A DNA stretch of 64,000 bases from Chiloscyllium plagiosum. Its lineage: Eukaryota. Both the position numbers and the translations under genes were made by a program. Below, one piece after another: positions 21,886 to 51,782 of the stretch. Below the pieces are notes generated by a model. It was not told where the DNA came from and made no database searches. It saw only the letters and a program-made list of their open reading frames with translations. Location of the stretch: the NCBI RefSeq assembly GCF_004010195.1, contig NC_057756.1:7755676-7819675 (forward strand), in the 5' to 3' direction. The stretch's first letter is position 1. Each line of letters opens with the position of its first letter.

Positions 21886-22083
21886 GACGTAATTTTAAAA
21901 ACAGATTCCAGTGACTCTATTTTGCAACAATTCTACTTGCAAATGACATCTGGGCATCCAGCTCATGTCTGTGAGGGCATTGTCTGAAAGCAGTTCCGAT
22001 CCCTCAAGAGCTGTGGAAAAAGCGGTGAGATCTGAATAACATCTTTCTATTTCAGAAGCTGATAAAATACCTGGGAGTGGACA

Positions 22084-22123
22084 ATGATTGGGAAATCTTA
22101 CATCTTGCTGTTGCTTCTTCAAG
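22084..22123 (+). CDS. Siglec-like gene: leader (signal peptide) exon, coding part
   Basis: Acceptor TTTCTATTTCAG at 22055; ATG ATT GGG AAA TCT TAC ATC TTG CTG TTG CTT CTT CAA G|GTAATG = MIGKSYILLLLLQ, phase 1, joins in frame to (A)GLAQEW or (A)GLSQEW. Confidence 0.82.
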
Positions 22124-23179
22124 GTAATGCCCTCGTCAGCTCGGACAGATGTATGGTTCAGAGGTTTGTAGAAGACCATTCTTATTGAGTTTTGGTTGGG
22201 AACCAATTCAGCAGTGAGCCAGAGTACAAGCCCAAACTATGGTAGGTTCACCCATCACCATTGTGCTCACTGATATGCCCTGGCTCCCGGTCTGATAGCA
22301 GCATTGGAGGGAGAAAGAGATCTCAGAATGTTTAAGGGTTAGTTGAGGTTACAAAGGAGAGTGGAGGGTTTGGCAATAGAAGGCTAGATTCATAAAACCG
22401 AGATACTGACACTCAAGGCATTAATGTAGGTCAGTGCGTGTGAGATGAGAGGGACATTTGAGAAGCGCGGATAAAAACTGAAGGGTGATGTGAATTTTGA
22501 TGTCAGGTCTTTGATAGCTGCGGCCCAACTTTTGTGCCTGTTACCGATTTTAGTCCCAATGTCCTACAGCAGCTCCTGGGATAGACAAGATACGAGTTAT
22601 CCTGATGGCCTCTGTTCTGCTGTACTGTGTAAATTTCACAGACTCTGCAGCTCCAGAGGAAATGGTTTAGTCACTAACTGAGAGGGCAATAGGATCAGAT
22701 TGCAGAGGAAGTTTGAAATGCAGGAATGGAAGGGATATTGGCAAGGGAAACACTTTCAGGGCTGTGGGAGAAAGAGTAGATCATGGGGACTAATTTAAGT
22801 AGGGCTGGCCCGGGCACGGTGGATGGAATAGTCTCTATCTGTGCTGTATATTTCTGCAATCCAATGATTTAAGCTCCTTACCAACAACGACTCACTTTCC
22901 TGCTGAAGTCATAGTTGTTCCAGATGGACAGGAAACAATTGGCTTCTGGTATCAGCCTTCTGCACGTGGTCCAGTTCCGTTTGAAGCACAAAGACTGTGA
23001 GAATCATCTGTAAAAGCCATACATTAATCAGAGAGACAACTTTGCCACATGCAGAGCTCAGGCCAGAGTGTTTCATAGTGTCTGCTGCAGTAGGGTCAGT
23101 GCTGAGCCTGGAGACAAGTCAGTCTCCAATTCTGCATCAGAATCAACACTACAGCAATGTGAGGTTTGGAACAGATATA

Positions 23180-23520
23180 ATCCCTTAAACACTGAGGATC
23201 CAAAGGCAGTGCATAGTCACTGATGATCAAAAGAATTCCCACAGATAAAGGGTATCCAAAGAGATCCCGGAAACAATAATGATGCAAAGGTTATCCCCAG
23301 ATAACGAGGATTCAAATAGATCCCTAAGACAACAGAGTTCCAAATACACTCCTCAGACAATGGAGACTCAGAGAAATCCCTTAGGCAATGAGGATCCAAA
23401 GAGATTCTTGAATAATGAGGATCTAAAGAGATTCCTCGGACAATGAGGATCCAAAGTGATTCTTGGACAATGAGGATCTAAAGAGATTCCTTGGACAACG
23501 AGGATCCAAAGTGATTCCTA
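23180..23520. repeat. Minisatellite, about 28-bp unit GGACAATGAGGATCCAAAGAGATTCCTT, about 12 copies
   Basis: Direct periodicity, more homogeneous toward the 3' end. Confidence 0.85.
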
Positions 23521-24073
23521 ATAGCCATCAAATTGAGAGCAATGACTTCCAAGGAGTCATAGAACATTATGGCATGGAAACAGGCCCTTCAGCCCAAACT
23601 GGTTCATGCTGACTCAGCTTGTTCTAATTGCCCACATTTGGTTCCTCCCCCTTTAAACCCTTCCCATCCATGTATCTATCCAAATGTTTTTAAATGTTGC
23701 TATTGTGTCTGCCTCAAACACTTTTTCTGGCAGTCCATTCCATTTATGCACTACTCTCTGCATACATGGGATCCTCAGTAGATTCATTCAATTGCTGCAA
23801 GAGAGAGAAAGAGGGAGAAGCAGAGAGTGAATATGAAATGGCTTGGGTCTGAGTGGCATGGAGGGGAACTTGCAGCTGGTGGTGTTTCCTTGTATCTGCT
23901 GCCCTTGTCCTTTTAGATGGAGTTAGTTGTGCGTCTGGAAGGCACTGTCTGAGGATCGCTGGTGAATTTCTTCAGTGTATCTTGCAGACAGCACACACTG
24001 CTGCTACTGAGCTTGAGTACTGCAGGGGGTGGACCTGCCAATAAAGACTGAAATGAGGAAACACTTTCAGTTT

Positions 24074-24779
24074 TTCTGTTCGCCGAGCTGGAAGTTTTTG
24101 TTGTAAACGTTTCGTCCCCTGGCTAGGCGACGTCATCAGTGCTTGGGAGCCTCCTGCGAAGCGCTTCTTTGATGTTTCCTCCGGTGTTTATAGTGGTCTG
24201 TCCCTGCCGCTTCCGGTTGTCAGTTTCAGCTGTCCGCTGTAGTGGTTGGTATATTGGGTCCAGGTCGATGTGTTTGTTGATGGAGTTTGTGGATGAATGC
24301 CATGCCTCTCGGAATTCCCTGGCTGTTCTCTGTCTGGCTTGCCCTATGATAGTAGTGTTGTCCCAGTCGAATTCATGTTGCTTGTTGTCTGCGTGTGTGG
24401 CTACTAAGGATAGCTGGTCGTGTCGTTTCGTGGCTAGTTGATGTCCATGTATGCAGATTGTTAGCTGTCTTCCTGATTGTCCTGTATAGTGTTTTGTGCA
24501 GTCCTTGCATTCATCCACAAACTCCATCAACAAACACATCGACCTGGACCCAATATACCAACCACTACAGCGGACAGCTGAAACTGACAACCGGAAGCGG
24601 CAGGGACAGACCACTATAAACACCGGAGGAAACATCAAAGAAGCGCTTCGCAGGAGGCTCCCAAGCACTGATGATGTCGCCTAGCCAGGGGACGAAACGT
24701 TTGCAACAAAAACTTCCAGCTCGGCGAACAGAACCACAGCAACGAGCACCCGAGCTACAAATCTTCGCACAAACTTTGA
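24074..24779. mobile_element. Young Penelope-like element insertion with inverted pLTR arms and 13-bp TSD
   Basis: - strand CKDCTKHYTGQSGRQL (YIG box). Arms 24074-24300 and 24507-24733 differ at about 2 positions. TSD ACTTTCAGTTTTT at 24063-24075 and 24780-24792. Sits in an old CR1 tail. Confidence 0.9.
24665..24704 (+). ncRNA. Minimal hammerhead ribozyme motif (antisense twin at 24103-24142)
   Basis: Identical to the motif at 396-435. Confidence 0.75.
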
Positions 24780-25955
24780 ACTTTCAGTTTTTGGAAATCT
24801 CCTCAACTGAGAGTCATGGCAGATGGATCATTCCATATATTCAATGCTGAGAGAGAGAGAGCTTTGATTGACAAGGAAGTAAAGGTGTTAGACAGGGCAA
24901 GCAGGAAAGTGGAGTTCAGTTCACAACTAATTGCTTAGTGGTTCAGGCTGGAGGGACCAAATGGCTATCCTGCTCATAATTCTTAGGACGTATAAGCAGA
25001 AAGTATTGGAGAAACTGAACAGATCCACTCCTATCTGTGGAGAGAGATACAGAGTTTACATTTCATATCCAGTATGAATCTTCCTCAGAAATCCTACTAT
25101 TTGGGATCTTGACTTATACAACCTTCCCTCTCTTTCACAAATGTGTAAATCCCCCGATGACAGTTGATGAACACTGAGAAACTGTGTTGGGTTTGCTCAG
25201 CACCGTTAGATGTTCCTCAGATCGGCATTTTTCTGTTCGTGGTCAGTCGTAATTTCGAAGAAGAGGAAACTCAACTGTATAGAGGAACTATGCTATTTAA
25301 AATTAAAATCGAAACCTTCTTTGAGACTATTAATCATCTCCACGGGGTGAAATTACCGCATGTTCTGATTGGATTGGAACTGGGATCTGATTGTGTATAC
25401 ATTCCATTAATAGAGAATCCTTCATCACATTTGAAACATTTGGTGGAGCAGCAGTCAGTATTGAGACAGATAGAGTCATAGTAACAGAGATGTACAGCAT
25501 GAAAACAGACCCTTCGGTCCAACTCATCCATGCCGACCAGATATCCTAACCTAATTTAATCCCACTTGTCAGCACCTGGCCCAGAACCCTCCAAACCCTT
25601 CCCCTTATTCAAAAACACAAAAATCTTCAGGGACTTCACAGGGTAGGCACAGACAGGGTATATCTGTTTGTGGGAAAGTCTAGGACCAGGAGGCCACAAA
25701 CTCAGAACAAAACGTCGCACATTTAAGACTGAGATGAGGAGGAATTTCTTCTCTGAGATTCACAAATCTGCGGACCTCTTCTACTGCAGAGTGTTGTCGA
25801 AGCTGGGTCGTCATTAAGTATATTCAAGGATGAGGTAGGCAGAAAAGGCAGGAAAGTGGAATTGAGGATTATCAGTTTAACCATGAACTGACTGAAAACT
25901 CATTGAAAATTCAATATGCCACATTGCCTATATCTTCTCCTACAGAGGATGGAAT

Positions 25956-26287
25956 CATCAAATCCCTACAGTGTAGGGATAGACCACTTGGCCCAACATG
26001 TCCACACCAATCCTCTGAAGAGTAACCCACCAAGACCCATTCCCCTACCGTATATTTACCCCTGACGAATGCACCTAAGCTGAACACTATGGGACAATTT
26101 AGCCTGGCCAATTCACAGAACCTGCACACCTTTGGACTGTGGAAGGAAACTGGAGTATCCAGAGGAAACCCACACAGATACAGGGAGAATATGCAAAGTC
26201 CACACAGGCAGTCACCTGAGGCAGGAATCAAACCCTGGTCCCTGGCACTGTGAGGCAGCAGTGCTAACCACTGAGCCACCATGCCGC
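25956..26287 (-). mobile_element. HE1/V-SINE
   Basis: tRNA head, V core and tail as in other copies. Confidence 0.9.
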
Positions 26288-27424
26288 GTGGTGGTCTTAT
26301 GGACGTCCTGCTAAATATCTGTTGAAAGTCGGTGAAACCACACTGAGGGTGCTGTGTGCAGTTTCCTTCACCACCTTATAAAGAGGATATCGAGGGGCTG
26401 GAAATGTGTCAAGGAGATTGACAAAGATGATCCCAGCCATGGGGGGTTTACACATCAGGAAATTATTGCCAATCAGGATGTCTTCTCTTTTGGAAGAAAG
26501 AAGGCTGAGGGATGACTCTATAGATGCTGACCAAGATTTGAATGTTTTAGATTGAGTGTATCAAGGGAAAAATATGTCATTTTGTGGGAAAGAGCATAAC
26601 TTTGGCCAATAATAAAAGGCAGACACCAAGAAATCCAATGAGGAATTTGGGAGAAACAGAGAGCCGGGGGAATTTGGGACTCGATCCTGCAGAGAGTGGG
26701 ATGAGATAGTGGGACTCACTCCAACTGGGAGTCAGGAAGAGAATATGGGACTCACACCCATAGTGAAGAGGGGGGAAGAATGTGGGACTCACTCCCACAA
26801 ACAATAATTGAGGTGAATCGTGTCAATGTGTTGAATGGGAACACTGGATAAACACATGAGGGAGAAGGGAATAGAGCGTTCTGATGGTAGACTTTGATTT
26901 AAAAAAAGCAATGGGAGGCTCAAATGCAGCATTAACAGCAGCATGGATGCGTTGGCACAAAGGGCCCTGTTCTCTGTCTTGTATCCTTTCCTATGGATTC
27001 ACAATTATCTGTAATTCTTGCTCTTTCTGGTCTGTCTGATCATTGTCAATGACTTTGTCCTCTAACAGTTCTCAAAGTTTTTGCCTGCTTCTTGAATCCC
27101 ACAATTAAATCTGTCCTCAACATAGCACCATCGTGTTACAGATATTAAACTGTGTCAATACACGAGATGAGGCATCTGTAATGCCTAAACCATCTGAAAA
27201 GGAGTTCTCCAAACAAAAATGTTTAAGGATCACTGGCTTTGACAATGAAGATCCAGGAAGGTGTCTCTAATTAGTGATTCATGCTGGTGATAAGGGTGTG
27301 AGTTCTGAGGGTTCCTCATCCATTCTGCTGCTCTGTAAATCAGCACAGACTGTATCTCCATTGGTGTGTGTGGGATGTACTGAGTTGGGTAGAAAACTGA
27401 ACAGGGCTGTGAGAACTGCGTGCC

Positions 27425-28566
27425 AATGGACTACAGTAAAGCCTTTGATAAGGTTCCACATGGTAGGCTGTTGGAGAAAATGCAGTGGCATGGAATTGAG
27501 GGCGATTTAGCAGTTTGGATTAGAAACTGGCTTTCTGAAAGAAGGCAGCGTGTGGTGGTTGATGGAAAATATTCAGCCTGGAGTCCGGTTACTAGTGGTG
27601 TGCCACAAGGATCTGTTTTGGGACCACTGCTGTTTGTCATTTTTATAAATGACTTAGACACAGGCATAGGTGGATGGATTAGTAAATTTGCAGATGACAC
27701 TAAAGTCGGTGGAGTAGTGGACAGTGTGGAAGAATGTCTCAGGTTGCAGGGGGACATTGATAAACTGCAGAATTGGGCTGAGAGGTGGGAAATGGAGTTC
27801 AATGCAGTTAAATGTGAGGTGATGCTCTTTGGGAAGGATAACAGGAAGGCAGAGTACAGGGTCGATGGAAAGATCTGCAGAGGGATCTTGGAGTCCATAC
27901 ATAGATCCCTGAAAGTTGCCACCCAGGTGGATAGTGCTGTTAAGAAGGTATACGGTGTGTCAGGTTTCATTCGTAGGGAGATTGAGTTCCGGAGCCGCAA
28001 TATCATGCTGCAACAATACAAAATGCTGGTGCGGCCACATTTGGAATATTGTGTACAGTTCTGGTCCCCATATTTTGGGAAGGATGTGGAAGCATTGGAA
28101 AAGGTGCAGAGGAGATTTACTAGGATGTTGCCTGGTCTGGAGGGAAGGTCTTATGAGGAAAGGCTGAGAGACTTGAACCTGTTCTCATTGGAAAGAAGAA
28201 GGTTAAGAGGGGATTTGATAGAGACATACAAGATGATCAGAGGATTAGTGAGGGTAGACAGTGAAAGTCTTTTTCCTAGGATGATGACATCAGTGTGTAC
28301 AAGGGGGCATAACTACAAATTGAGGGGTGATAGATTTAAGTCAGATGTCAGAGGCAGGTTCTTTACGCAGAGAGTGGTAAGGGTGTGGAATTCCCTACCT
28401 GCTAATATAGCCATCTCAGCCACATTAGGGAGATTTAAACAATCTTAGATAACCACATGGATGATTTTGGGATAGTGTAGGGGGATGAGCTGAGAATAGT
28501 TCACAGGTCGGTGCAATATCGAGGGTCGAAGAGCCTGTTCTGTGCTGTATTGTTTTATGTTCTATG
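27425..28566 (+). mobile_element. CR1 LINE, 5'-truncated, RT C-terminal ORF of 342 aa
   Basis: [54 protein letters not shown]; TTCTATG tail. Confidence 0.95.
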
Positions 28567-28744
28567 TAGGATGAACCTGTCTGCTCTGTGTCCAGAGTTC
28601 CTCTCCATCTGCTGTGTACCCCTTGGGGAGTTGTGTGTCCTGTAGATGGTCCACACTGCAGCTACCAGTGACGGAAGGTGTGGATATCAAATCAAGTGGA
28701 TCCACAGGCCATCCAGTGCTAAATACTGGTATTTCTCTCCACAG

Positions 28745-29110
28745 CTGGACTGGCACAAGAGTGGAATGCCAAAACTCAAGGTGGGGTGGTGGCACAGGAA
28801 GGTTCCTGTGCACAGATTCCATGCCGCTACAATTACCCTTCACATCTGTCAAACCTCCCGCGAATTGGAATCTGGTTTAATAACGAAAATAGGCAAACAT
28901 CATCAACAGCCTTTCACTCCAACGATCACAGTCGTGAGTTGGCACGGTTCCGCCATCGGACCCAGCTGTCTGGAGACCTGAAAGATGGAGACTGTTCCCT
29001 GATTATAAAGGGCATCACACGGGAAGATGCAGGACCATATTATTTCAGAGTAGAATTTGACAATGTGAACAGTTACAGCTACCTTCCAGCAACCTGGCTT
29101 CAAGTTTCTG
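28745..29110 (+). CDS. Siglec-like gene: V-set Ig exon V1
   Basis: TTTCTCTCCACAG acceptor, G|GTAAGT donor, 366 bp, phase 1-1, open; QEGSCAQIPC, GDLKDGDCSLII, DAGPYYFRVE Siglec V-set signature. Confidence 0.93.
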
Positions 29111-29547
29111 GTAAGTGCTGAGTTATAATTACTCATAATCCTACTGTCAAGTCAATGGGAGAGGACAGGCCACCAAGTCGGATTTGTTAGTTTTATAGCT
29201 GTGTTAACCTGGTGTTGCAGCTTTCAGGATTTCATCTGTTTGTATTGTATAGTATTCATCTATTTGAGTATTGCAATTGTAATAGCCCCCACTGCTTCCT
29301 CTGGCAGTTCATTCCACAAACAAACCACCCTCTGTGTAAAAAGGTTGCTCCTCAAGTCCCTTTTATATCTTTCTTCTGTTTTTACATCCTTGTAACCTCC
29401 CTCTTCCTTCAGTTCTATGGACAGTCTCGAGTTCTGTCTTCTAGTGGATACCTGTCTTTACGCATCCCATTGTTGGTGGATTGACATTCCAGTTGTCTGG
29501 AACTTGGAGGTCAGGAATTCCTTCCCCCAATGTCCCTGCCTCTCTCC

Positions 29548-31020
29548 TTTGACGTCTTGCCTTAAGACCATAAGAAATTGGAATAGGCGGTGGCCATTCA
29601 GCCCCTCATGCCTGCTCTGCCATTCAGTACGGTCATGGCTGATCCGACATTCCTCACGTCCACTTCCTGCATTTTCCCCGTAACCCTTGATTCCTCAACT
29701 AATGAAAGATCTGTCAACGTCAGCCTCAAAAACACACAAGGATCTTGCCCCCAATAGCTCTCTGTGGCAAAGAGTTCTAAAGACACTTAACCCTCCGAGA
29801 GAAGAAATTCCTCTTCATCTCAGTCTTAAATTTTAATCTTTTAATCCGAGACACTGTCCTCTTGTTCGAAACTCCCCCATGGAGGATAACATCCTCTCAA
29901 TAGCAACTCTATCAAGCCCCTTCAAAATCCTTTATGTTTCAATCAGGTCACCTGTCTTTCTTCTTAAATTCACTGAGAACAGTCCCAACCTGTTTAACCT
30001 TTGATCCTCCATTCTGGGGATCATCCTAGTGAACTTCCTCCGAACTGCCTCCAGTGAAATGATATCTTTCCTTACATAAGGGGACCAAAACTGTTGACAG
30101 TACTCTGCAGGTGGTTTCCCCAGCACCTTGTCCATTTGCAGGAAGACTTCCTTACACTTTATCCTCTAAACCCTTTGAAGTAAGGGCCAACATTCCATTA
30201 GCCTTTGTTATGGACCAGGCCAGACCCCCGCAAGCCATTTCAAGAAAGTAGCCTGGACCCTAACTTTGCGAGTTGTTTTAAGCAGGTGTAGAGTGGATAT
30301 TCCAGGAGAAATGCAGCTGGCCCAACCACTTACTTTTAAACAAAACAGAATTTATTTGTAAAAATACCGAATGAAACACAGACAAAAGAGAACAGAATGC
30401 AGAATAACTTAACGTATCTGAAAACCCAACAGATAATCACAAAAAAAAGGAAAAATTCAACATAGGAGAGATGTCAGAGAGGGGGAGGAACAGCATGGAC
30501 CTGCTTCTTTGGTTCCAGCGGCTTCACAACACTGCCTGACAGCTAAAACCAAACCAAACCAGAGAAAAGATGAGCTGGGAGAACTGGCCACTCCCCTCTC
30601 ATTGTACAAGTGTTTTCTTTTAACTTGAAGACCCTTTTTCCTGAGACAGTATCTATTAGCTATAATCAAACTGGCCACAAAACCCTTCAAACCTAGATAC
30701 CCTGGAACCTGTGTTTTTATGATCGCCCGAGTAAAGAAAACCCAAGAACAACATAACCTGGTTAAAAAAGCAGCATCATCACACTTTCCTGATTACCTTC
30801 TGTGTTTTGAGCACCAGTCTCTCCAAGACCTTCTGTTCAGCAGCTTTCTGCAGGTTTTTATCCTTTCAAATAAGACTCTGGTCTTTCGTTCTCCCTTCCA
30901 GAATGAACAACTTCCCATTTTCCCATGTTATTTTCCTTTTGCCAATTTTTTTGTCCACTGACTTAACCAATCAATAGCTCTCTGTAGACTGTTTGAATCT
31001 CTCTCGTAACGTGCCTTTCC
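29548..31020 (-). mobile_element. CR1 LINE 3' fragment interrupted by a solo LTR
   Basis: EYCQQFWSPYVRKDIISLEAVRRKFTRMIP; continues past 30783. Confidence 0.8.
30206..30783. mobile_element. Solo LTR, same family as 1684-2232
   Basis: TGTTATGG...TCACA termini, flanks CCTT/CTTT, colinear similarity with 1684-2232. Confidence 0.78.
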
Positions 31021-31333
31021 ACTTCTTCCACTTTGACTCTTTGAGTGAGCTTTTTGTCAGCTGCCTTAATCTCACTTCATATGACTCGCCATTTATACTT
31101 TGCCTGACAATGGTCTCTTGCAATAACTTGGGATGTTTAGTACATTGAGTGTGCTATATAAATATAATTTTGGAATACATTTTACTGATTACAAGCCCAT
31201 TCTGCAAGTTAATGAATCCTTCAAATAATTTGTTCCAATCCACCTCAGCACTGACCATTTCTCAATCCAGAGTGACCTGTAAATCTGGATCTACAAGCCA
31301 CTTGGTGCTAAATACTAATGTTTCTCGTCCCAG

Positions 31334-31702
31334 CTGGACTGTCACAGGAGTGGAAACATGGTACTCCCCAAGAGGTGACAGTGCAGGAAGGTTCCTGTGC
31401 ACAGATTCCTTGCCATTACAATTATCCATCATGTCTGGAAAATGAACCACGCAATGGAGTCTGGTTTAACAGTGAGAACCAGAAGCCCTGGGATCCCATA
31501 GCCTTTCACTCCAAGGATCACATTCACGAGTTGCCACGGTTACGCAATCAGACCCAGCTGTCTGGAAACCTCAAAAATGGAGACTGTTCCCTGATTATAA
31601 CCAACGTCAAACGAGAAGATGCAGGACCTTATTTTTTCAGAGTAGAATTTGAAAATGGCCCCAGTTTTAACTATTATCCTGTAACCCAGCTTCATGTTTC
31701 CA
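31334..31702 (+). CDS. Siglec-like gene: V-set Ig exon V2
   Basis: TTTCTCGTCCCAG acceptor, A|GTAAGT donor, 369 bp, phase 1-1, open; QEGSCAQIPC, GNLKNGDCSLII, DAGPYFFRVE. Confidence 0.93.
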
Positions 31703-32479
31703 GTAAGTGCTGTGTTATAATTGCTCAATAGTTCACATCCAACACTCAATGGGAAATAACATAAATTGTGACAACATTAACACAACAACCAGTGTGTGAT
31801 AAACCCATGTCTGATTCTCATTTACTGGAGGTAGCTTCCAGTTCAATCCTGAAGAAACCTCTGTTACTGACTTGAACATTAATAATTCAATATATTAACT
31901 GTGTCCATCAATGCTATAAGGTAATCCACTCCCATCTATCTCTCTAATCCTTTTTAAATGACCCAGAGAGATAAAATAAAACTCATATTTCTGTTGCGCC
32001 TTTCACCATCTCATGGTATTCCAAATATCTTCACAGAAGTAATTCTCCCATGGGAGCTGCTGTTGCTATGAAGGATTCACAGCAGCCAAATATTGCACAG
32101 CAAGCTCCAAAAAACAGGATTCTGACAAAAATCTGATCGCATCTTCCATTGTTCTGGCTGAGATTGTGACAAATAGGTGCTGCATGTGGGATTTCATTGG
32201 AATTTGCTAGAGTTTGGAGGAAGCGAGGAGCCTGTCCTTCCTGGGCTCTGAACTGCACCACCACCCAGTATTGTCCAATCATGGGTCTCAGTGTAAAAGT
32301 GTGTTAAACTGAGTGACATAGACCTCACCAAATCCAAAAATGGAAAGTCTTTATTGATTGTTGTCGTCGATACTAGTATCATCCTGGGGAAAGCGTTTTC
32401 TCTCATGGGAGTGCGATTTTTATTTTAACAACCACTTCACGATATATGTATCTGAAAGAGCTCATTTTGTATGTGTTAG

Positions 32480-32773
32480 GTTTCACAGATAAACCCATGA
32501 TATTCCCTGTGGAAATTATCGCTGGAAAACGTGTGAACCTAAGGTGCACCTTCAACACAACGTGCAATGGAACAGCTCCTGTCTTAGCCTGGGACACTCC
32601 CACTGCCGTACCTGGATCAGTCTCAAACACTGTAACTCAGCATGGTGTCACTCTGACCTATACTTCTGTTCTGAGCCTGATCCCATCACCCAGACACCAG
32701 GGACAAACTCTCACCTGCAGAGTGAGTTATCCAACTGTTTCATCAGAGCAGACCATCACACTGACAATACAAT
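32480..32773 (+). CDS. Siglec-like gene: second-domain C2-set Ig exon
   Basis: FTDKPMIFPVEIIAGKRVNLRCTFNTTCNGTAPVLAW...TSVLSLIPSPRHQGQTLTCRVSY; extra Cys typical of Siglec domain 2; TAG acceptor (alternative in-frame CAG at 32488), T|GTAAGT donor. Confidence 0.92.
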
Positions 32774-32882
32774 GTAAGTATGGACATCTACCATTCTACA
32801 TTATGCGGAGTATTCTACGTTGTGCCTGGCAAGGTCTGACAGTGGAAATATAACTGTGCAATCAAGTACTCTCCAGCAATGC

Positions 32883-35800
32883 AGGACTGACCCTCTGACA
32901 GTGCAGCACTCCTCAGCACTGACCCTCTGACCGTGAATCACTCCTCAGCACTGAACTTCTGACAGTACAGCACTCCTCAGTACTGACCCTCTGACAGTAC
33001 GGCACACCCTCAGACTGGCACCCCGACAGTGCAGCAAAACTCAGTACTGACCCTCTGACCGTGGATCACTCCTCAGTACTGACCCTCTGACAGTACAGCA
33101 CTCCACAGCGCTGACCCTCTTACAGTGCAGCACTCCTCAGCACTGACCCTTTGACAGTACAGCACTCCTCAGCACTGACCCTCTTACAGTGCAGCACTCC
33201 TCAGCACTGACCCTTTGACAGTGCAGCACTCCTCACCACTGACCCTCCGACAGTGCAGCACTCCACAGCACTGACCCTCTGACAGTGCGGCGCTCCCTCA
33301 GCACTGACCCTCCGACAGTACGGCGCTCCCTCAGCACTGGCACCCAGACAGTACAGCACTCCACAGCACTGACCCTCTGACAGTGCAGCACTCCCTCAGC
33401 ACTGGCACCCAGACAGTGCAGCACTTCTCAGCACTGACCCTCTGACAGTGCAGCACTCCCTCAGCACTGACCCTCCGACAGTACGGCACTCCCTCAGTAC
33501 TGACACTCTGACAGTGCAGCACTCCCTCAGTACTGACCCTCTGACAGTGCAGCACTCCTCAGCACTGACCCTCCGGCAGTGCAGCACTCCTCAGCACTGA
33601 CCCTCCGACAGTACGGCACTCCCTCAGCACTGACCCTCCGGCAGTGCAGCACTCCTCAGCACTGACCCTCTTACAGTGCAGCACTCCCTCAGCACTGACC
33701 CTCTGACAGTGCAGCACTCCCTCAGTACTGACCCTCCGACAGTGCGGCGCTACCTCAGTACTGACCCTCCGACAGTGCGGCGCTCCCTCAGTACTGACCC
33801 TCCGACAGTGCGGCACTCCCTCCCTCAGTACTGACCCTCCGACAGTGCGGCGCTACCTCAGTACTGACCCTCCGACAGTGCGGCATTCCCTCAGTACTGA
33901 CCCTCCAACAGTGCAGCACTCCCTCAGTATTGACTCTCCAAAAGTGCGGCACTCCCTCAGCACTGACCCTCTAACAGTACGGCACTCCCTCAGTACTGAC
34001 ACTCTGACAGTGCAACACTCCTCAGCACTGACCCTCTAACAGTGCAGCACTCCTCAGCACTGACCCTCCGACAGTACGGCACTCCCTCAGTACTGACACT
34101 CCGACAGTGCAGCACTCCCTCAGTACTGACACTCCGACAGTGTAGCACTCCTCAGCACTGACCCTCCGGCAGAGCAGCACTCCCTCAGTACTGACCCTCC
34201 AACAGTGCGGCACTCCCTCAGTACTGACCCGCCGACAGTGCGGCACTCCCTCAGTACTAACCCTCCGGCAGTGCACACTCCCTCAGCACTGACCCTCCGG
34301 CAGTGCAGACTCCCTCAGTACTGACCCTCCGACAGTGCGGCACTCACTTAGTACTGACCCGCCGACAGTGTAGCACTCCCTCAGCTCTTACCCTCCAGCA
34401 GTGCACACTCCCTCAGCACTGACCCTCCGGCAGTGCAGACTCCCTCAGTACTGACCCTCCTGCAGTACACACTCCCTCAGTACTGACCTTCCTGCAGTGC
34501 ACACTCCCTCAGTACTGATCCTTCTGNNNNNNNNNNNNNNNNNNNNNNNNNNNNNNNNNNNNNNNNNNNNNNNNNNNNNNNNNNNNNNNNNNNNNNNNNN
34601 NNNNNNNNNNNNNNNNNNNNNNNNNNNNNNNNNNNNNNNNNNNNNNNNNNNNNNNNNNNNNNNNNNNNNNNNNNNNNNNNNNNNNNNNNNNNNNNNNNNN
34701 NNNNNNNNNNNNNNNNNNNNNNNNNNNNNNNNNNNNNNNNNNNNNNNNNNNNNNNNNNNNNNNNNNNNNNNNNNNNNNNNNNNNNNNNNNNNNNNNNNNN
34801 NNNNNNNNNNNNNNNNNNNNNNNNNNNNNNNNNNNNNNNNNNNNNNNNNNNNNNNNNNNNNNNNNNNNNNNNNNNNNNNNNNNNNNNNNNNNNNNNNNNN
34901 NNNNNNNNNNNNNNNNNNNNNNNNNNNNNNNNNNNNNNNNNNNNNNNNNNNNNNNNNNNNNNNNNNNNNNNNNNNNNNNNNNNNNNNNNNNNNNNNNNNN
35001 NNNNNNNNNTCCCTCAGCACTGACCCTCCGAAAGTGCCCACTCCCTCAGCACTGACCCTCCGACAGTACAGCACTCCTCAGCACTGACCCTCTGACAGTG
35101 CAGCACCCCTCAGCACTGACCCTCTGACAGTGCGGCACTCCCTCAGTACTGACATTCTGACCATGCATCACTCCTCAGCATTGAACTTCTGACAGTGCAG
35201 CACTCCTCACCACTGACCCTTTGACAGTGCAGCACTCCTCACCACTGACCCTCCAACAGTGCAGAACTCCTCAGTACTGACCCTCCGACAGTGCAGCACT
35301 CCCTCAGCACTGATCCTCTGACAGTGCAGCACTCCCTCAGCACTGACCCTCCGACAGTGCAGCACTCCCTCAGCACTGACCCTCCGACAGTACGGCACTC
35401 CCTCAGTACTAACACTCTGACAGTGCAGCACTCCTCAGCACTGACCCTCTGACAGTGCAGCACTCCCTCAGCACTGACCCTCTGACAGTGCAGCACTCCT
35501 CTGCACTGACCCCCTGACAGTGCGGCACTCCCTCAGTACTGACCCTCCGACAGTGCGGCATTCCCTCAGTACTGACCCTCCGACAGTGCAGCACTCCCTC
35601 AGTATTGACCCTCCAAAAGTGCAGCACTCCCTCAGCACTGACCCTCCGACAGTATGGCACTCCCTCAGTACTGACACTCCGAAAGTGCAGCTCTCCCTCA
35701 GTACTGACACTCCGATAGTGCAGCACTCCTCAGCACTGACCCTCCGACAGTACGGCACTCCCTCAGTACTGACACTCCGACAGTGCAGCACTCCCTCAGT

Positions 35801-38406
35801 ACTGACACTCCGACAGTGTAGCACTCCTCAGCACTGACCCTCCGGCAGAGCAGCACTCCCTCAGTACTGACCCTCCAACAGTGCGGCACTCCCTCAGTAC
35901 TGACCCGCCGACAGTGCGGCACTCCCTCAGTACTGATCCTCCGGCAGTGCACACTCCCTCAGTACTGACTCTCCTTAAGTGCACACTCCCTCAGTACTGA
36001 CCCTCCGACAGTGCGGCACTCACTTAGTACTGACCCGCCGACAGTGTAGCACTCCCTCAGCACTGACCCTCCGGCAGTGCAGACTCCCTCAGTACTGATC
36101 CTTCTGCAGTGCACACTCCCTCAGTACTGACCTTCCTGCAGTACACACTCCCTCAGTACCGACCGTCCTGCAATGCACACTCCCTCAGTACTGACCCGCT
36201 GACAGAGCAGCAATCCCTCAGCACTGACCCTTTGACAGTGTAAGCACTCCCTCAGCACTGACCCTCTGACAGTGCAGCATCTCCACAGTGCTGACCCTCT
36301 GACAGTGCAGCAATCCCTCAGCATTGACCCTCCGACAGTGTGGCATTCCCTCAGTACTGACCTTCTGACAGTGCAGCATTCTCTCCGTACTGATTTTCTG
36401 ACATTGCTGTGGTCCCTCAGTGCTGACCCTCTGATAGTGTAATCCTTCCTCAGTACTGACCCTCTGACAATGAGGCAATTCCTCAATGCTGACCCTCTGA
36501 CAGTGCAGCATCCCCCACAATGCTGACCCTCTGACAGTGCAGCATCCCCCACAGTGCTGGCCCTCTGACAGTGCAGCATTCCCACAGTACTGACCTTCTG
36601 ACAGTGCACCATTCCCTCAATACTGACCTTCTGACAGTGCAGCATCCCCTTCAGACAGTGCTGCATTCCCTCAGTACTGACTTTCTGACAGTGCGGTGGT
36701 CCTTCAGTACCGACCCTCTGACAGTGCAGCATTCCTACAGTGCTGACCCTCTGACAGTGCAGTATTCCTTCAGTACTGACCCTCTGACGGTGCAGCAATC
36801 CCTCAGTAATGACCCTCTGACAGTGCAGCATTCCCACAGTGCTGACCCTCTGACAGTGCAGCATTCCCTCAGTACTGACCTGACAGTGCAGCATTCCCAC
36901 AGTGCTGATCCTCTGACAGTGCAGCATTCCGTTAGTACTGACTGTCTGACAGTGCAGCAATCCCTCAACTCAGACCCTCCAACAGTGCGGCATTCCCTCT
37001 GTACTGACCCTCCAGCAGTGCAGCACTCCTCAGCACTGACCCTCCGACAGTGCGGCACTCCCTCAGCACTGACTTTCTGGCAGTGCAGCACTCCTCAGCA
37101 CTGAACCTCTGACAGTGCAGCACTCCCTCAGCACTGACCCTCTGACAGTGCAGCACTCCCTCAGCGCTGATCCTCCGGCAGTGCACACTCCCTCAGCATC
37201 GACCTTCCAACAGTACGCCACTCCCTCAGCTCTGACCCTCTGGCAGTGCACACTCCGTCAGCACTGACCCTCCAACAGTGCTGCGCTCCCTAAGCACTGA
37301 TTCTCCAGCTGTGCATACTCCCTCAGTACTGACTTTCTGGCAGTGCAGCAATCCCTCAGTAATGACCCTCCTGCAGTGTACACTCCCTCAGTGCTAACCT
37401 TCCTGCAGTGCACACTCCCTCAGTACTGACCCTCCTGCAGTGCACACACCCTCAGCACTGACCCTCCCGCATTGCACACTCCCTCAGGACTGACCCCCTG
37501 GCAGTGCACACTCCTTCAGTACTGACCCTCCAGCAGTGCGGCACTCCCACTGTACTGACCCTCTGGCAGTGCAGCACTCCTCAGTACTGACTCTCCAACA
37601 GTACTGCACTCCCTTAGCACTGACTCTTGGACAGTATAGCACTAGCTCACTAATGACCCACCAACAGTACTGCACTTGCTCAGTGCTGACCCTCAGACAG
37701 TGCAGCATTCAGTCACTACTGATTATCAGAGACTATGGCACTCCCTCAGTACTGACCCTCTGATAGTGAACAGTCACTCAGTACTGACCCTCGGACAGTA
37801 CTGCACCCCCTCAGCACTGACTCTCTGCCAGTATAGCACTCCCTCAGTAGTGACCCTCTGACAGTATAGCACTCCCTCAGCACTGACCCTCGGACAGTAT
37901 AGCACTCCCTCAGTGCTGACCCTCTGACAGTGCAGCATCCCCTTCATACTGACCCTCTGACAGTGCAGTGGTCCCTCAGTGCTGACCCTCTGACAGTGCA
38001 GCATCCCCTTCATACTTACCCTCTGACAGTGCAGCATCCCCTTCATACTTACCCTCTGACAGTGCAGTGGTCCCTCAGTACTGACCCTCTGACAGTGCAG
38101 CAATCCCTCAGCATTGACCCTCTGACAGTGCAGCATTCCCTCCGCACTGATTTTCTGACAGTGCAGCATTCCCACATTGCTGACCCTCTGATAGTGCAGT
38201 ATTCCCTCAGTCCTAATCCTCTGACAGTGTAGCATTCCCTCCGTACTGATGTTCTGACAGTGTGGTGGTCCCTCAGTGTTGACCCTCTGATAGCGTAATC
38301 CTTCCTCAGTACTGACCCTCTGACAGTATAGCAATCCCTCAGTGCTCACCCTCTGACAGTATAGCAACTCACTCAGTTCTGACCCTCTGACAGTGCAGCA
38401 TTCCCT
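32883..38406. repeat. Intronic minisatellite, 33-bp (and 31-bp) unit CACTCCCTCAGTACTGACCCTCCGACAGTGCAG, spans a gap
   Basis: Continuous tandem periodicity over about 5 kb of called bases. Confidence 0.97.
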
Positions 38407-39388: not shown

Positions 39389-39670
39389 ACTCACCACGGA
39401 ATCTCTCAATTACATCTCTTGCTGTGATTAAAGATTCATCGATCAGTGTAATTGAGGGGAATTCTGCAGTGATAATCTGCTCTGTTGTGAGCTTCCCAGC
39501 TTCTAACCTGATGTGGAGACATCTTAACATCACAATGAACAGAACAAGCTCCAACAATGACTTATGGTTGCAAATTCCTCACATTACGTACAGGGAGACT
39601 GGAGACTATCAGTGTGTGGCAGAGAATAAATATGGAGCAGTGGATGGCTCCATTACCATTGCTGTGGAAT
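39389..39670 (+). CDS. Siglec-like gene: 282-bp repeated Ig exon R1 (intact)
   Basis: SPRNLSITSLAVIKDSSISVIEGNSAVIICSV...W...GDYQCVAEN; TAG acceptor, GTAAGT donor, phase 1-1. Confidence 0.88.
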
Positions 39671-40311
39671 GTAAGTGAATGTGTATATGTTTCAACATCA
39701 CTCACTGATACACACACAGAAGGTCACATGCACTCAGACACACACTGCCTCACGCACTAGGAAACAGACACCAGCACAATACTGCCCGAGTGATTGGCAG
39801 ATACCTCCCACTTTACACATTCACTGCCTCAACCATCATCACCCAGTTGCAGCACTATCTATAACAATCTGCACTCCAGAAATTCACCAAGACTTCATTG
39901 ATAGCATCTTCCATACCCATATTGGTGGGCAAGGGCAGCAGCTACATGGAAACACTACAACTCGCAAGTTCCCCTGCAAGCAACCTATAGCGTGACTTGG
40001 AAATATATCACCATTTCGACAGCATAACAAGGTCAACTGCTATTTTCGAGACTGCAATGGTTCAATAAGGCACCATCTCTTTCTCAAGGCAATTACCGAT
40101 AGGCAACAAATGCTAGCTGACCCAAAACCACCTACAATCTTTGAATTAATAAAAGGAAACAAACAGGAATTGTTTATTTGAAATGTTGACATCAGAATTT
40201 CACAGGGGAAAGACAACTTGAAATGCACATGGTGATCAGATACAGAGGGATGAAATATTTAGCATCCATGTGCTCTGTTTTCATTCACATGAATTCCTTA
40301 TTTAGAGTTAG

Positions 40312-40593
40312 ACACACCACCAAATCTCTCAATTAGTTCTCTTGCGAAGATTAAAGATTCATCAATCAATATAATTGAGGTGAATTCTGCAATGATAATC
40401 TGCTCTGTCGAGAGGCTCCCAGCTTCTAACCTGGCAGGGAGATATTTTAATGTAAAAATGATCAGAACAAGTTCCAACAATGAGCTGTAGTTGAATATTC
40501 CTCATATTACGTACAGGGAGATTGAAGACTATGAGTGTGTGGCAGAGAATGGTCAGGGAACTGTGGAGGGCTCCATAACCATCACTGTGCAAT
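40312..40593 (+). pseudogene. Repeated Ig exon R2, pseudo-exon
   Basis: In-frame TAG at 40488-40490 (TGG in most sister copies), eroded polypyrimidine tract, most divergent copy. Confidence 0.85.
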
Positions 40594-41976
40594 GTGAGTG
40601 TACACAGGCATTGAAATGGCTTGCAGACACACACATGAACAGATATGTATATCCTACAGACACCCAGTTGTGACATATCCTCTCAGTGTTACACTGGAGC
40701 ATCAGTATAAGATTGAATTCTCTGTGGAAGGAATAGAAACTCTAGATTAACAAGATGCTCAATGATCCAACGGCCTCGTGCACCCAGAATTGTAGATTTC
40801 TTTGTTTTGAAATCAGTTTTGATGTTGATTTCATATGGATTGGTGAAGCAGCAACTGATTAAAATTGTAACATTGAGGGAAAAAGAATTTCAGTGGTGAC
40901 TATATTCAATCCTGCCGAGAGGTAAGGGTGAGGTTTATTGCAACGTTTCTCAGATCTCACTCAGATCAATTCAAGAATCAGATGTTAGTTTAGGTTTTAA
41001 TGAGTTAAACAGTTAGTAGGAGGGCAGAGGGAGAGAGAGCGAGAGAAAGAGAAAGACAGAGAGACAGAGAGAGCGAGAGAGAGAGAGAGAGAGAGAGAGG
41101 CAGAAGCTAGGTCCCTGCAGGTTAGAGTACGTGAGCTGTACTCCAAGCAAATGTTATGAATGAAACTGGCTGGATGGAGCTTAGAATCAAGTCCCACAAA
41201 GTACTCTACAGCTCCAATGCAGTCAGGAATCTCGAGAAGTCATTTGTGCCAATAAGTGAGATTACATCATGCAGTTAGAATCCAGGAAGAATTTACTAAG
41301 CATCATTAATATTTCAGAAAGTGAAAACTTGGAACCGCTTGAACACATTTATTGAGATCTGGTAATCCCAGGGACACTAATGTCTGGTGATGTTCCTGAA
41401 AAGTCCATAGAATCGATCTTCACTTCATTTAGTGTTTAATGAGCTCTGTAGCATGATCAGTCACAGTTTCTCTGATGTGATATTTTCCTCATGTTAACTT
41501 TGGAAATTACTGGATATGATTTAGATAGTACTAATGTTCTAATTTTGAATCATAACATTTCCTTTCATTTGTTTAAAATATGGACTTTTATGATTTTATG
41601 CTCTTTGTAATGACATGGCAACACAAACATTGCCTCTGTTCAAGAAAGCACTTGACAGATGATAACTTGGCAATCTGGCTTGGCATGATAACATATCCTT
41701 CAATATTAAATTGATCATATCCAATTCACTGCTGCCAAGGCTTTGGGAATATTGTGAGGATGAGAGAGGCATTTTCTTCCTTTCAGGATGGAGAGTGTCC
41801 TCATTTGTGGGATGAGAAACCGACAGTGTGACAGTTTACATGGGCAGTGTCCTTCATACAGCAACTACCACTCAGAGAAGGCGATGGGGGGGTGCACATC
41901 TGAGTGTCAGAGAGATGGTTATGGAGTCTTGCTGGGCACTCTGTTTGCTAACAGTACTCTCTTCTCTTGTTTTCAG

Positions 41977-42258
41977 ACTCACCACGGAATTTCTCAATTA
42001 CATCTCTTGCTGTGATTAAAGACTCATCAATCAGCGTAATTGAGGGGAATTCTGCAGTGATAATCTGCTCTGTTGAGAGCTTCCCAGCTTCTAACCTGAC
42101 GTGGAGACATCTTAATGTCACAATGAACAGAACAAGTACCAGCAATGAGCTGTGGTTGGAGATTCCTCACATTACATACAGGGAGACTGGAGACTATCAG
42201 TGCGTGGCAGAGAATGAACATGGATCAGTGGAGGGCTCCATAACCATCACTGTGGAAT
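41977..42258 (+). CDS. Repeated Ig exon R3 (intact)
   Basis: 282 bp open, CAG / GTGAGT splice sites. Confidence 0.88.
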
Positions 42259-42344
42259 GTGAGTGTATACAGACTTCAACATCTCTCTCACATACACACA
42301 CACAAACACACAGGTTCAGACCTGTAGACACACACATGTGACAT

Positions 42345-42478
42345 GAGAGATTTAAACAATCCTTAGATAAGCACATGGATGATTTTGGGATAGTGTAGGG
42401 GGACCAGCTGAGAATAGTTCACAGGTTGGCGCAACATTGAGGGCCGAAGGGCCTGTTCCGCGCTGTATTGTTCTCTGT
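42345..42478 (+). mobile_element. Very short CR1 3' end, same family as 27425-28566
   Basis: Matches 28428-28565; absent from the paralogous positions near 46047 and 47866. Confidence 0.8.
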
Positions 42479-45958: not shown

Positions 45959-45979
45959 GTGAGTGTACAGACTTCAACA

Positions 45980-46014
<35 letters not shown>

Positions 46015-51685: not shown

Positions 51686-51782
51686 ATTCCTGATGAAGGG
51701 CTTATGCTCGAAACATCGTCTCTCCTGCTCCTCAGATACTGCCTGACTGACTGTGCTTTTCCAGCACCACACTTATTGACTT
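51686..51782 (+). mobile_element. Single-arm PLE terminal fragment with hammerhead motif (51687-51719)
   Basis: CTGATGA-A-GGGC-TTAT-GCTC-GAAA-CA-TC followed by the same arm as the 9240, 18948 and 48129 elements. Confidence 0.75.

What the first reader, a model, noticed from the sequence alone, without database searches (positions are those of the whole stretch)
22056..32773. Siglec-like gene with two intact V-set exons sharing one leader and one C2 exon: candidate switchable glycan-binding head
Seen: one leader exon (22084-22123), two open V-set exons (28745-29110, 31334-31702) with canonical splice sites and homologous intron flanks, then a single domain-2 exon. I found no second leader between V1 and V2. 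Both V exons begin with the end of the signal peptide (AGLAQ-EW, AGLSQ-EW) and keep the FRVE arginine. They are about 63% identical (77/123 by hand), with differences concentrated in the A strand, the C-C' loop (NNENRQTSST vs NSENQKPWDPI) and the G strand (DNVNSYSYL vs ENGPSFNYY). Known: Siglecs normally have one N-terminal V-set domain whose GSC cysteine bonds to the adjacent C2 domain, and these loops set glycan preference; tandem V-sets are rare (e.g. Siglec-12). Inference: with only one C2 partner, V1 and V2 may be mutually exclusive cassettes giving two specificities on one stalk. A V1-V2 double head is also frame-compatible.
Basis: partly seen in the sequence, partly recalled or inferred. 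Interest (0 to 1): 0.85.

Follow-up and report, generated by a model that had tools for sequence, protein, structure and literature searches.

The report
Shark Siglec gene with spare head exon
A bamboo-shark sialic-acid receptor gene carries two intact exons for its sugar-binding head, but the evidence at hand shows only the first being used, and the second looks like an optional add-on that would stack behind the first, not a swap-in alternative.

Summary
One leader (22084-22123), two open phase-1 V-set exons (28745-29110, 31334-31702; 62% identical in protein) and one C2 exon (32480-32773) start a long 'sialoadhesin-like' inhibitory Siglec gene of Chiloscyllium plagiosum. No second leader was found.

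The 'switchable head' reading is not supported for this gene.
- All five RefSeq models of the orthologue (four C. punctatum isoforms, one H. ocellatum) join V1 directly to C2.
- Three RNA-like runs gave thin coverage of V1 and C2 and none of V2.
- No classical mechanism that enforces mutual exclusion is present.

V2 belongs to an old, elasmobranch-wide V lineage. It carries an extra cysteine seven residues after the B-strand cysteine, much as the C2 domain's interdomain cysteine sits six after. That cysteine occurs in 29 of 40 V domains that follow another V and in 0 of 125 leader-proximal ones, but the association is not phylogenetically significant.

RefSeq models with 2-7 tandem V-sets exist in 11 elasmobranch species. 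One great white shark gene has isoforms with and without a V exon.

Best reading: V1-C2 is the main form and V2 is an optional cassette giving a Siglec-12-like double head. An unused copy is the main rival. The scan noted the same layout 135 kb downstream.

The parts
22084..22123 (+). Leader exon, coding part (MIGKSYILLLLLQ + 1 base; phase 1), donor GT at 22124
   Evidence: The peptide is identical to the N-terminus of C. punctatum sialoadhesin-like X1/X3/X4 and of H. ocellatum P0182.
22127..22163 (+). Alternative start and donor inside intron 1 (MPSSARTDVWFR + 1 base, GT at 22164)
   Evidence: Read. The same 12 residues open C. punctatum isoform X2 (P0179), which then continues into V1.
28745..29110 (+). 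V1: V-set exon, 366 nt, phase 1-1. This is the head domain that the evidence shows in use.
   Evidence: 90% identical to the V of C. punctatum P0168/P0179 and 88% to H. ocellatum P0182. A contig of run X1 covers 28798-28961 with 0 differences.
31334..31702 (+). V2: second V-set exon, 369 nt, phase 1-1, intact, with an extra Cys (YPSC). No transcript evidence was found for it.
   Evidence: 91% identical to the second V of C. punctatum P0211. It sits in the V2-type clade. Depth is 0 in runs X1-X3.
32480..32773 (+). C2-set exon (Siglec domain 2), 294 nt, with three Cys including the interdomain one (TTC)
   Evidence: All three Cys align with CD33 C163, C169 and C212 (PMC13220637 and PMC7426717 passages). 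Contigs end at both exon borders (records 14 and 24).
32882..38406 (.). 33-nt minisatellite of about 5.5 kb with two N gaps, in the intron after the C2 exon
   Evidence: N runs lie at 34527-35009 and 38407-38530.
39391..63751 (+). Array of ten I-set/Ig exon copies of the same gene. tblastn-matched parts: 39391-39669, 40314-40592 (internal stop), 41979-42257, 44861-45139 (stop in last codon), 45682-45957, 47639-47815 (beside an N gap), 50597-50902, 59469-59747, 61767-62060, 63467-63751.
   Evidence: Exons 41979-42257 and 59469-59747 are 100% identical to C. plagiosum XP_043539166.1 (P0180).

Best explanation
This is the 5' end of a long inhibitory CD33-related-type Siglec gene of the whitespotted bamboo shark. 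Its orthologue in C. punctatum is the RefSeq 'sialoadhesin-like' gene.

The main transcript splices leader -> V1 -> C2 -> a long run of I-set domains. V1's first cysteine (GSC) is then expected to bond to the extra cysteine of the C2 domain, as in CD33.

V2 is an intact copy of an old 'second-position' V-set exon type, and it is skipped in that main form. Because it is a symmetrical phase-1 exon with normal splice sites, it can be included as a cassette. Inclusion would give leader-V1-V2-C2, a Siglec-12-like double head. In that form V1's GSC cysteine would bond to V2's extra B-C-loop cysteine, and V2's own GSC cysteine would bond to C2.

Shown: the exons, their family, the orthologue models, the cysteine pattern across the family, and the absence of V2 from the contigs that were laid.

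Inferred: that V2 is ever included in this gene, the disulfide chain, and sialic-acid binding by either head.
For: - Gene identity. Window exons are 100% identical to C. plagiosum XP_043539166.1 in two I-set exons and at its N-terminus. V1 and C2 are 88-93% identical to the 'sialoadhesin-like' or 'Siglec-10' models of C. punctatum and H. ocellatum.
- V1->C2 is the modelled junction. All 5 of 5 orthologue models read ...TWLQVSGFTDKP..., which joins V1 directly to C2. C. punctatum isoform X2 uses an alternative donor that is also present in the window (22127-22163). That argues the 5' models rest on transcripts (inference).
- Reads. Run X1 (same organism label as the DNA holders) covers V1 at 28798-28961 with 0 differences and C2 at 32530-32719. 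All bins from 31099 to 32421, V2 included, have depth 0 in X1, X2 and X3.
- V2 is not a fresh copy of V1. dS is 0.53. V2 groups with the second V of H. ocellatum P0164 and R. typus P0166 (SH-aLRT 90), while V1 groups with the orthologues' V1.
- The extra cysteine. Cys at +7 after the B-strand Cys occurs in 29 of 40 distinct V domains that follow a V, 0 of 125 leader-proximal ones, 2 of 7 in models cut at the domain start, 0 of 9 'other' and 0 of 4 after a C2. C2's interdomain Cys lies at +6 and aligns with CD33 C169, which forms the interdomain bond (PMC7426717 passage).
- Tandem V models are common. They occur in 43 of 176 family proteins held, from 11 species. The nearest V2, at 91%, sits in a V1-V2-C2 model (P0211).
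- Cassette behaviour is modelled. In one Carcharodon gene, X1/X2 is L-V1-V2-C2 and X4 lacks residues 14-136, which is exactly one V exon.
- V2 is intact, whereas 2 of 10 I-set exon copies of the same gene carry stops.
Against: - No read, contig or gene model shows V2 of this gene spliced to anything.
- The read evidence is thin. The runs are only guessed to be RNA and are held as contigs. Depth on V1 is 3.6, and only 164 of its 366 nt are covered. The covered part of C2 is identical in protein to the paralogue P0236, so that contig may not come from this gene. The one run on record as RNA (single-cell, X10) laid 0 reads, which is no test.
The orthologue models may lack V2 simply because the exon is absent there.
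- The cysteine-position association is not significant once relatedness is allowed for. There are 3 independent pairs on supported branches: about 2.1 go the same way, none the other way, p 0.25-1.
- Nine V-after-V domains lack the Cys. Carcharodon X4 places a Cys-bearing V2 directly after the leader.
- All family data are automatic gene models. Some of them clearly chain exons of neighbouring units, for example 7 V in Cetorhinus.
- Intactness has little weight here. V1 and C2, which are expressed, differ from their C. punctatum counterparts as much as V2 differs from its nearest relative: 10% against 9%.
Confidence: 0.48

Rival explanations
1. V2 is an unused exon copy in this gene. It would be a recent duplicate or gene-conversion product of the second V of the neighbouring Siglec-13-like gene that landed in the V1-C2 intron. 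It is always skipped and has not yet had time to decay.
For: - V2 is 91% identical to the V2 of paralogue P0211, while V1 and C2 are only 79% and 78% identical to that gene's V1 and C2.
- No V2 appears in 5 of 5 orthologue models or in three runs.
- The same gene tolerates dead exon copies: 2 of 10 I-set copies carry stops.
- Expressed exons of this family evolve about as fast as V2 does, so an open frame over this time span is weak evidence of use.
Against: - V2 keeps an open 123-codon frame, both splice sites, all four cysteines, the essential Arg and the core motifs.
- Only 3 of its 9 departures from the V2-type consensus are its own; 6 are shared with P0211.
- dN/dS between V1 and V2 is 0.48, although most of that path predates this gene.
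Confidence: 0.27
2. The double head is constitutive. V1 and V2 are both always included, as in mammalian Siglec-12, and the lack of V2 reads is a sampling accident.
For: - Both exons are in frame with consensus-like sites.
- V1-V2-C2 is the usual layout of the models that hold a V2-type domain.
- The cysteine pattern fits a chained V1-V2-C2.
- Read coverage is fragmentary.
Against: - 5 of 5 orthologue models join V1 to C2, and their 5' ends show transcript-like detail.
- V2 has depth 0 in all three runs that cover V1 and C2.
Confidence: 0.12
3. One reading: V1 and V2 are mutually exclusive cassettes, giving two glycan specificities on one stalk (leader-V1-C2 or leader-V2-C2).
For: - There is one leader and one C2 exon, and both V exons start with the signal-peptide end.
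- The loops that set glycan preference differ between V1 and V2.
- A leader-V2-C2 isoform is modelled for one Carcharodon gene (P0311).
Against: - No enforcing mechanism is present. The intron is 2,223 nt, all sites are GT-AG, including both exons stays in frame, and there is no selector/docking pairing beyond shuffles (8 to 34 of 40 shuffles reach the observed energy).
- V2's extra Cys is never found in leader-proximal V domains (0 of 125). It would be unpaired in a leader-V2-C2 protein.
- In the Carcharodon gene the partner isoform is the double head, not leader-V1-C2.
- No V2 reads were found.
Confidence: 0.08

Closest known systems
Mammalian Siglec-12 (Siglec-XII, S2V/SLG)
   Same: It is an inhibitory CD33-related Siglec with two N-terminal V-set domains before the C2 domains (PMC7876704 and PMC6288428 passages). 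NCBI's pipeline names many of the shark tandem-V models 'Siglec-12'.
   Different: The resemblance is independent in origin. Shark V1 and V2 cluster with each other's lineages, not with mammalian proteins, and the solved Siglec V-sets match only distantly (E 1e-13 to 1e-15). In this gene the second V is not in the modelled transcript. The shark family reaches 3-7 V in models. I did not examine whether Siglec-12's second V has a matching extra Cys. I recall that the two 2001 splice variants differ by one V-set; I saw only that paper's title, in a reference list.
CD33 (Siglec-3) exon-2 skipping (CD33 deltaE2)
   Same: A symmetrical V-set exon of a Siglec is included or skipped, which changes the head on the same stalk. 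The C2 domain's extra Cys (C169) is the interdomain partner (PMC7426717 passage). The C2 exon here aligns with it.
   Different: In CD33 skipping removes the only V-set, which leaves no lectin head. Here skipping V2 leaves a normal single-head Siglec, and inclusion would add a second head.
RefSeq 'sialoadhesin-like' of Chiloscyllium punctatum (XP_072409734-37) and 'Siglec-10' of Hemiscyllium ocellatum (XP_060708556)
   Same: These are the orthologues. The leader is identical, V1 is 88-90% and C2 90-93% identical, and they have the same long I-set array.
   Different: The models contain no V2. I could not check whether the exon exists in their introns.
Sialoadhesin (Siglec-1) and CD22 (Siglec-2)
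   Same: They are long multi-Ig Siglecs with one V-set head. The sialoadhesin V-set is among the best solved matches, with W2 and R97 aligned.
   Different: The shark gene's C-terminus lies outside the window; I read it from P0180. It has LYANI and TEYAKI motifs, which I recall as ITIM/ITSM-like and typical of CD33-related Siglecs and Siglec-10, and which sialoadhesin lacks. The repeated domains are recent tandem copies of one exon. CD22 is only a weak match, at E 1e-3.

Membership tests
Siglec (sialic-acid-binding Ig-like lectin) family | N-terminal V-set domain with the essential arginine on the F strand | tested here: met
   Both V1 and V2 keep the R of FRVE. It aligns with the Arg of Siglec-10, -8, -7, MAG and sialoadhesin.
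Siglec (sialic-acid-binding Ig-like lectin) family | Cysteine pattern: a B-E intrasheet pair plus one extra Cys in the V-set and one extra Cys in domain 2 for an interdomain bond | tested here: met
   Met by sequence only. GSC, IPC and GDC are present in both V exons. The three Cys of the C2 exon align with CD33 C163/C169/C212 (PMC13220637 and PMC7426717 passages). No bond was observed.
Siglec (sialic-acid-binding Ig-like lectin) family | Binds sialylated glycans | not testable with these tools
   Needs glycan arrays on V1-C2-Fc and V1-V2-C2-Fc proteins.
CD33-related / inhibitory Siglecs | Cytoplasmic ITIM plus ITIM-like/ITSM motif | tested here: met
   The tail lies outside the window. The C. 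plagiosum model P0180 matches window exons at 100% and ends with ...LYANINF... and ...TEYAKIRF.... The motif consensus is recalled, not taken from a call.
Siglec-12-type double-V receptor | Two V-set domains translated in tandem in the mature protein | tested here: inconclusive
   It is frame-compatible and modelled in paralogues (P0211, P0164). For this gene, however, 5 of 5 orthologue models and the laid contigs show V1-C2 only.
Mutually exclusive exon cluster | An enforcing mechanism: too-short intron, U2/U12 incompatibility, frame shift with NMD when both are included, or competing RNA pairings | tested here: not met
   The intron is 2,223 nt, all sites are GT-AG, and 366 and 369 nt both keep the frame. 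Duplex energies lie within shuffles. Only 60-nt upstream flanks were tried against two 300-nt stretches, so this was not an exhaustive search.
Mutually exclusive exon cluster | Transcripts hold exactly one of the alternative exons | tested here: inconclusive
   Only V1 was seen. No junction tables were obtained for V2.
Sialoadhesin (Siglec-1) orthologue | Orthology to Siglec-1, with 17 Ig domains and no tyrosine motifs in the tail (recalled) | tested here: not met
   The tail has ITIM/ITSM-like motifs. A bird sialoadhesin is only 31% identical over the V-C2 part of the related shark protein P0011. 'Sialoadhesin-like' is a pipeline name.

The most novel reading that the evidence does not exclude
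Elasmobranch CD33-like Siglecs may have evolved a 'stackable' V-set module. This would be a second-position V lineage that carries, in its B-C loop, the same acceptor cysteine that Siglec C2 domains use. Lectin heads could then be chained covalently (V-S-S-V-S-S-C2) and added or dropped by cassette splicing. In this gene, regulated inclusion of V2 would switch a single-head receptor into a double-head one with two different binding loops on a very long stalk.
Probability: 0.3. Interest if true: 0.65.

Novelty: new variant of a known kind. Interest (0 to 1): 0.42.

Why it matters
Mammalian Siglecs are described as having a single lectin head, with Siglec-12 as the lone exception (PMC7876704 passage). 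If sharks routinely build Siglecs with two or more heads and vary the number by exon choice, that would be an independent way to tune the valency and specificity of self-glycan sensing in the oldest jawed-vertebrate immune systems.

It would also give structural biologists a natural V-V interface to study. The extra-cysteine signature is a simple, testable marker.

For this particular gene the practical message is more modest. The annotated form has one head, and the second head exon still awaits transcript evidence.

I found no paper describing shark Siglec gene structure. Three searches returned 11, 2 and 6 papers, and none was on the topic by title or abstract. Supplements were closed, and the whale-shark genome paper (PMC8455134) was seen only in the listing.

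Tried and rejected
- Second leader. blastn of the region against itself and an ATG/hydrophobic/phase-1-donor scan found none between V1 and V2.
- Docking/selector RNA pairing. The first script timed out. A smaller one gave energies within shuffles.
- Selection. Pairwise dN/dS is 0.48, but it cannot separate the two branches. No nucleotide sequence of any relative was available.
- Decay test. V2 has 9 departures from the V2-type consensus at 64 conserved columns. The median of the others is 1, and 1 of 30 has as many. This looked like decay, but 6 of the 9 are shared with P0211's V2, and the consensus is dominated by other shark orders, so I rejected it as evidence.
- Cysteine and position. The raw table is striking, but the independent-pairs test has no power.
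- Same-species gene model. Three protein searches found no protein holding this V1 or V2 at 100%. The C. plagiosum RefSeq models of this gene start inside I-set exons. This is probably because of the minisatellite and the gaps after the C2 exon (inference).
- Structure prediction was not run, because the tool returns no coordinates and the Cys-Cys distance could not have been read.
- The single-cell RNA run laid no reads.

Full report
**What is there.** The sequence shows the following exons.
- A leader exon at 22084-22123 encodes MIGKSYILLLLLQ plus one base, with a GT donor.
- V1 runs 28745-29110 (366 nt) and V2 runs 31334-31702 (369 nt).
- The domain-2 exon runs 32480-32773 (294 nt).
- All have AG acceptors and GT donors and are phase 1-1.

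V1 and V2 are 62.3% identical over 122 aligned residues, and 275 of 366 aligned exon nucleotides match. Both pass Pfam's V-set and Ig_CD22 cut-offs, and the third exon passes C2-set_2. The best solved relatives of both V exons are Siglec-10, MAG, sialoadhesin, Siglec-8, -7, -5 and CD33, at E 1e-11 to 1e-15, with the essential arginine aligned.

**Extent of the duplication and the missing leader.** Only 28697-29135 and 31286-31727 are alike, at 76%. That is the exon plus about 48 nt upstream and 25 nt downstream, and beyond that the flanks do not align. No copy of the leader lies between V1 and V2. A scan for ATG + hydrophobic core + phase-1 donor found only one weak ORF there, with two alternative poor donors.

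**Which gene and which animal.** Downstream of the C2 exon lie a 33-nt minisatellite of about 5.5 kb with two N gaps (32882-38406) and then ten copies of an I-set exon up to 63.7 kb.
- Two of these exons, and the N-terminus of XP_043539166.1 ('Siglec-10 isoform X1', Chiloscyllium plagiosum; P0180), are 100% identical to the window. So the window is C. plagiosum or something extremely close.
- That species' RefSeq models start inside I-set exons and lack the V and C2 part.
- Their tail, which lies outside the window, holds LYANI and TEYAKI motifs. I recall these as ITIM and ITSM types.
- The orthologues are C. punctatum 'sialoadhesin-like' X1-X4 (V1 90%, C2 90%) and H. ocellatum XP_060708556 (V1 88%, C2 93%).

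**What the orthologue models do.** All five join V1 directly to C2 (...TWLQVSGFTDKP...). Isoform X2 of C. punctatum opens with MPSSARTDVWFR. The window encodes the same peptide at 22127-22163, just past the leader's donor, followed by a GT. Such detail suggests that the 5' models rest on transcripts; this is my inference. The models may therefore lack V2 because the exon is skipped or because it is absent.

**Reads.** The look-up of sequencing runs listed no holder on record as RNA. It gave three small-share runs guessed to be RNA (X1, same organism label as the DNA holders; X2 and X3, other labels) and two single-cell RNA runs. I laid X1, X2, X3 and X10 on 28600-33000 at 90% likeness, with these results.
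- Bins 31099-32421, V2 included, have depth 0 in X1-X3. V1 and C2 bins have depth, and repeat-rich parts of the V1-V2 intron have high depth. This pattern fits RNA plus transposon transcripts.
- X1 has one 164-nt contig on V1 (28798-28961; 0 differences; depth 3.6) and one on C2 (32530-32719; 1 difference; depth 3.3).
- An X3 contig has 40 letters upstream of V1's acceptor. An X2 contig runs 28 letters upstream of the C2 acceptor. An X3 contig runs 111 letters past the C2 donor. The exon borders are therefore in use.
- X10 laid no reads, which is no test.

The limits are serious. Coverage is low and fragmentary and the data are contigs only. Tables 5 and 7 were truncated (60 joints and 630 loose ends not shown) and listed no V1-C2 or V2 junction. 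The covered part of C2 is identical in protein to the paralogue P0236. This evidence leans against constitutive V2 but does not exclude a minor form.

**V2 is an old domain type, not a recent copy of V1.** Searching V1 against 1.84 billion representatives gave 1,135 hits at E <= 0.001, of which the best 150 are listed. The top hits are elasmobranch RefSeq models with 2-7 V-sets in a row before one C2.
- After two more searches I held 304 proteins. Of these, 176 belong to the family and 43 have at least two adjoining V domains. Fifteen of the 43 are isoforms of one Cetorhinus gene.
- The 43 come from 11 species (names).
- In a tree of 85 distinct V domains, V1 sits with the orthologues' V1 (SH-aLRT 89). 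V2 sits with the second V of H. ocellatum P0164 and R. typus P0166 (SH-aLRT 90), inside a clade of second-position V domains from lamniform, carcharhiniform and squalomorph sharks.
- The nearest V2 is the second V of C. punctatum 'Siglec-13' (P0211; 91%), a leader-V1-V2-C2 model. Its accession number directly precedes those of the sialoadhesin-like isoforms.

**The extra cysteine.** V2 has a fourth cysteine (YPSC) seven residues after the B-strand cysteine, and V1 has none there.
- The C2 exon's extra cysteine lies six residues after its B-strand cysteine. It aligns with CD33 C169, which forms the interdomain bond (PMC7426717 passage). The intradomain pairs are C41-C101 and C163-C212 (PMC13220637 passage).
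- Across distinct V domains of the 176 proteins, the +7 cysteine is present in 29 of 40 that follow another V (9 without, 2 unparsed). It is present in 0 of 125 leader-proximal ones (117 none, 4 with a Cys elsewhere, 4 unparsed). It is also present in 2 of 7 models cut at the domain start, 0 of 9 in other contexts and 0 of 4 after a C2.
- V2-type domains used as the sole head have lost it or never had it (for example P0162, P0014, P0172, P0194).
- On the tree the trait needs at least 6 changes, of which 4 are forced by supported branches.
- The independent-pairs test finds only 3 usable pairs: 2.1 go the same way, 0 go opposite, p 0.25-1. The association is suggestive, not shown.
- The reading that this cysteine accepts the GSC cysteine of the preceding V is an inference.

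**Against mutual exclusion.** The V1-V2 intron is 2,223 nt, all sites are GT-AG, and including both exons keeps the frame. Pairing of the 60-nt upstream flanks with 300 nt after the leader or before C2 is no stronger than in shuffles: 17, 34, 8 and 16 of 40 shuffles reach the observed energy.

**For variable use of V exons in the family.** One Carcharodon gene has X1/X2 = leader-V1-V2-C2 and X4 lacking residues 14-136, which is exactly the V1 exon. X3 has a partial V1. Model isoforms with one or two heads therefore exist. The X4 isoform also shows a cysteine-bearing V2 directly after a leader, which counts against a strict need for an upstream V.

**Is V2 constrained here?**
- dN/dS between V1 and V2 is 0.48 (dS 0.53, dN 0.25), but most of that path predates this gene.
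- V2 differs from P0211's V2 at 11 of 122 residues. V1 and C2 differ from their orthologues at about 10%. Expressed exons therefore evolve as fast as V2, and intactness is weak evidence.
- A 26-nt run is identical between V1 and V2 (28795 and 31384). This hints at gene conversion or strong constraint around GSCAQIPC.
- Two of the ten I-set exon copies in the same gene carry stops, while V2 carries none.

**Verdict.**
- Most likely (0.48): V1-C2 is the main product, and V2 is an optional cassette that would add a second head.
- Main rival (0.27): V2 is an unused copy.

The layout is a variant of the Siglec-12 double-V theme and of CD33-type V-exon skipping. It is already present, unremarked, in automatic annotations of many sharks and rays. 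I found no paper on it.

Noticed in passing
window 22127-22163: Just past the leader's donor lies an ATG and an 11-codon extension ending in a second phase-1 GT donor. Its peptide, MPSSARTDVWFR, is identical to the N-terminus of C. punctatum sialoadhesin-like isoform X2 (P0179). That isoform would lack a signal peptide.
   Followed up: partly
window 32882-38406: A 33-nt minisatellite of about 5.5 kb (roughly 150 units, 78-85% matches) with two N gaps starts about 110 nt after the C2 exon. It may explain why the C. plagiosum RefSeq models of this gene are cut at the 5' end.
   Followed up: partly
window 40314-40592 and 44861-45139: Two of the ten near-identical I-set exon copies are broken. One has an internal stop and has lost the conserved Trp. 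The other has a stop in its last codon and a changed donor. RefSeq isoforms X1-X3 of C. plagiosum start in different I-set exons (39391, 45682, 47639) and skip these two.
   Followed up: partly
window 28795-28820 and 31384-31409: A 26-nt run is identical between V1 and V2, over QEGSCAQIP. Orectolobiform V1 and V2 both read GSCAQIPC, while carcharhiniform and lamniform V1 and V2 both read GSCVQIPC. This hints at concerted evolution between the two exon types.
   Followed up: no
window 28743-28883 (run X3) against 32545-32745: In run X3 the V1-like contig differs at 13 of 141 letters while the C2 contig differs at 1 of 201. The V1-like contig is either a paralogue's V or a much faster-evolving or polymorphic V1.
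   Followed up: no
window 27420-28448 (+); 10855-11196, 49510-49821 and 58259-58858: The 27420-28448 ORF is a reverse-transcriptase fragment of LINE type (RVT_1, E 3e-20), lying in the leader-V1 intron. The other three ORFs look like the same kind of fragment by eye in the ORF list and were not scanned. Transposon-derived parts of the V1-V2 intron attract very deep contig coverage.
   Followed up: partly
window 16091-17177 (+): ORFs with a weak rhodopsin-type 7TM match (E 2e-4, below Pfam's cut-off) lie upstream of the Siglec gene. They seem to be interrupted by a SINE-like insert.
   Followed up: partly
proteins P0158 and P0187-P0200 (Cetorhinus), P0160 (S. torazame), P0159 (Hemitrygon): Some RefSeq models chain 5-7 V exons, or five V-C2 units, in one protein. 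The Cetorhinus array alternates V domains without and with the extra Cys. These may be real arrays or neighbouring units stitched together by the pipeline.
   Followed up: no
one search hit list: 143 elasmobranch proteins of 206-656 aa match a V1-V2-C2 query at E <= 1e-20, and two of them come from transcript-like Logan contigs. This points to a large CD33-like Siglec expansion in sharks and rays.
   Followed up: no
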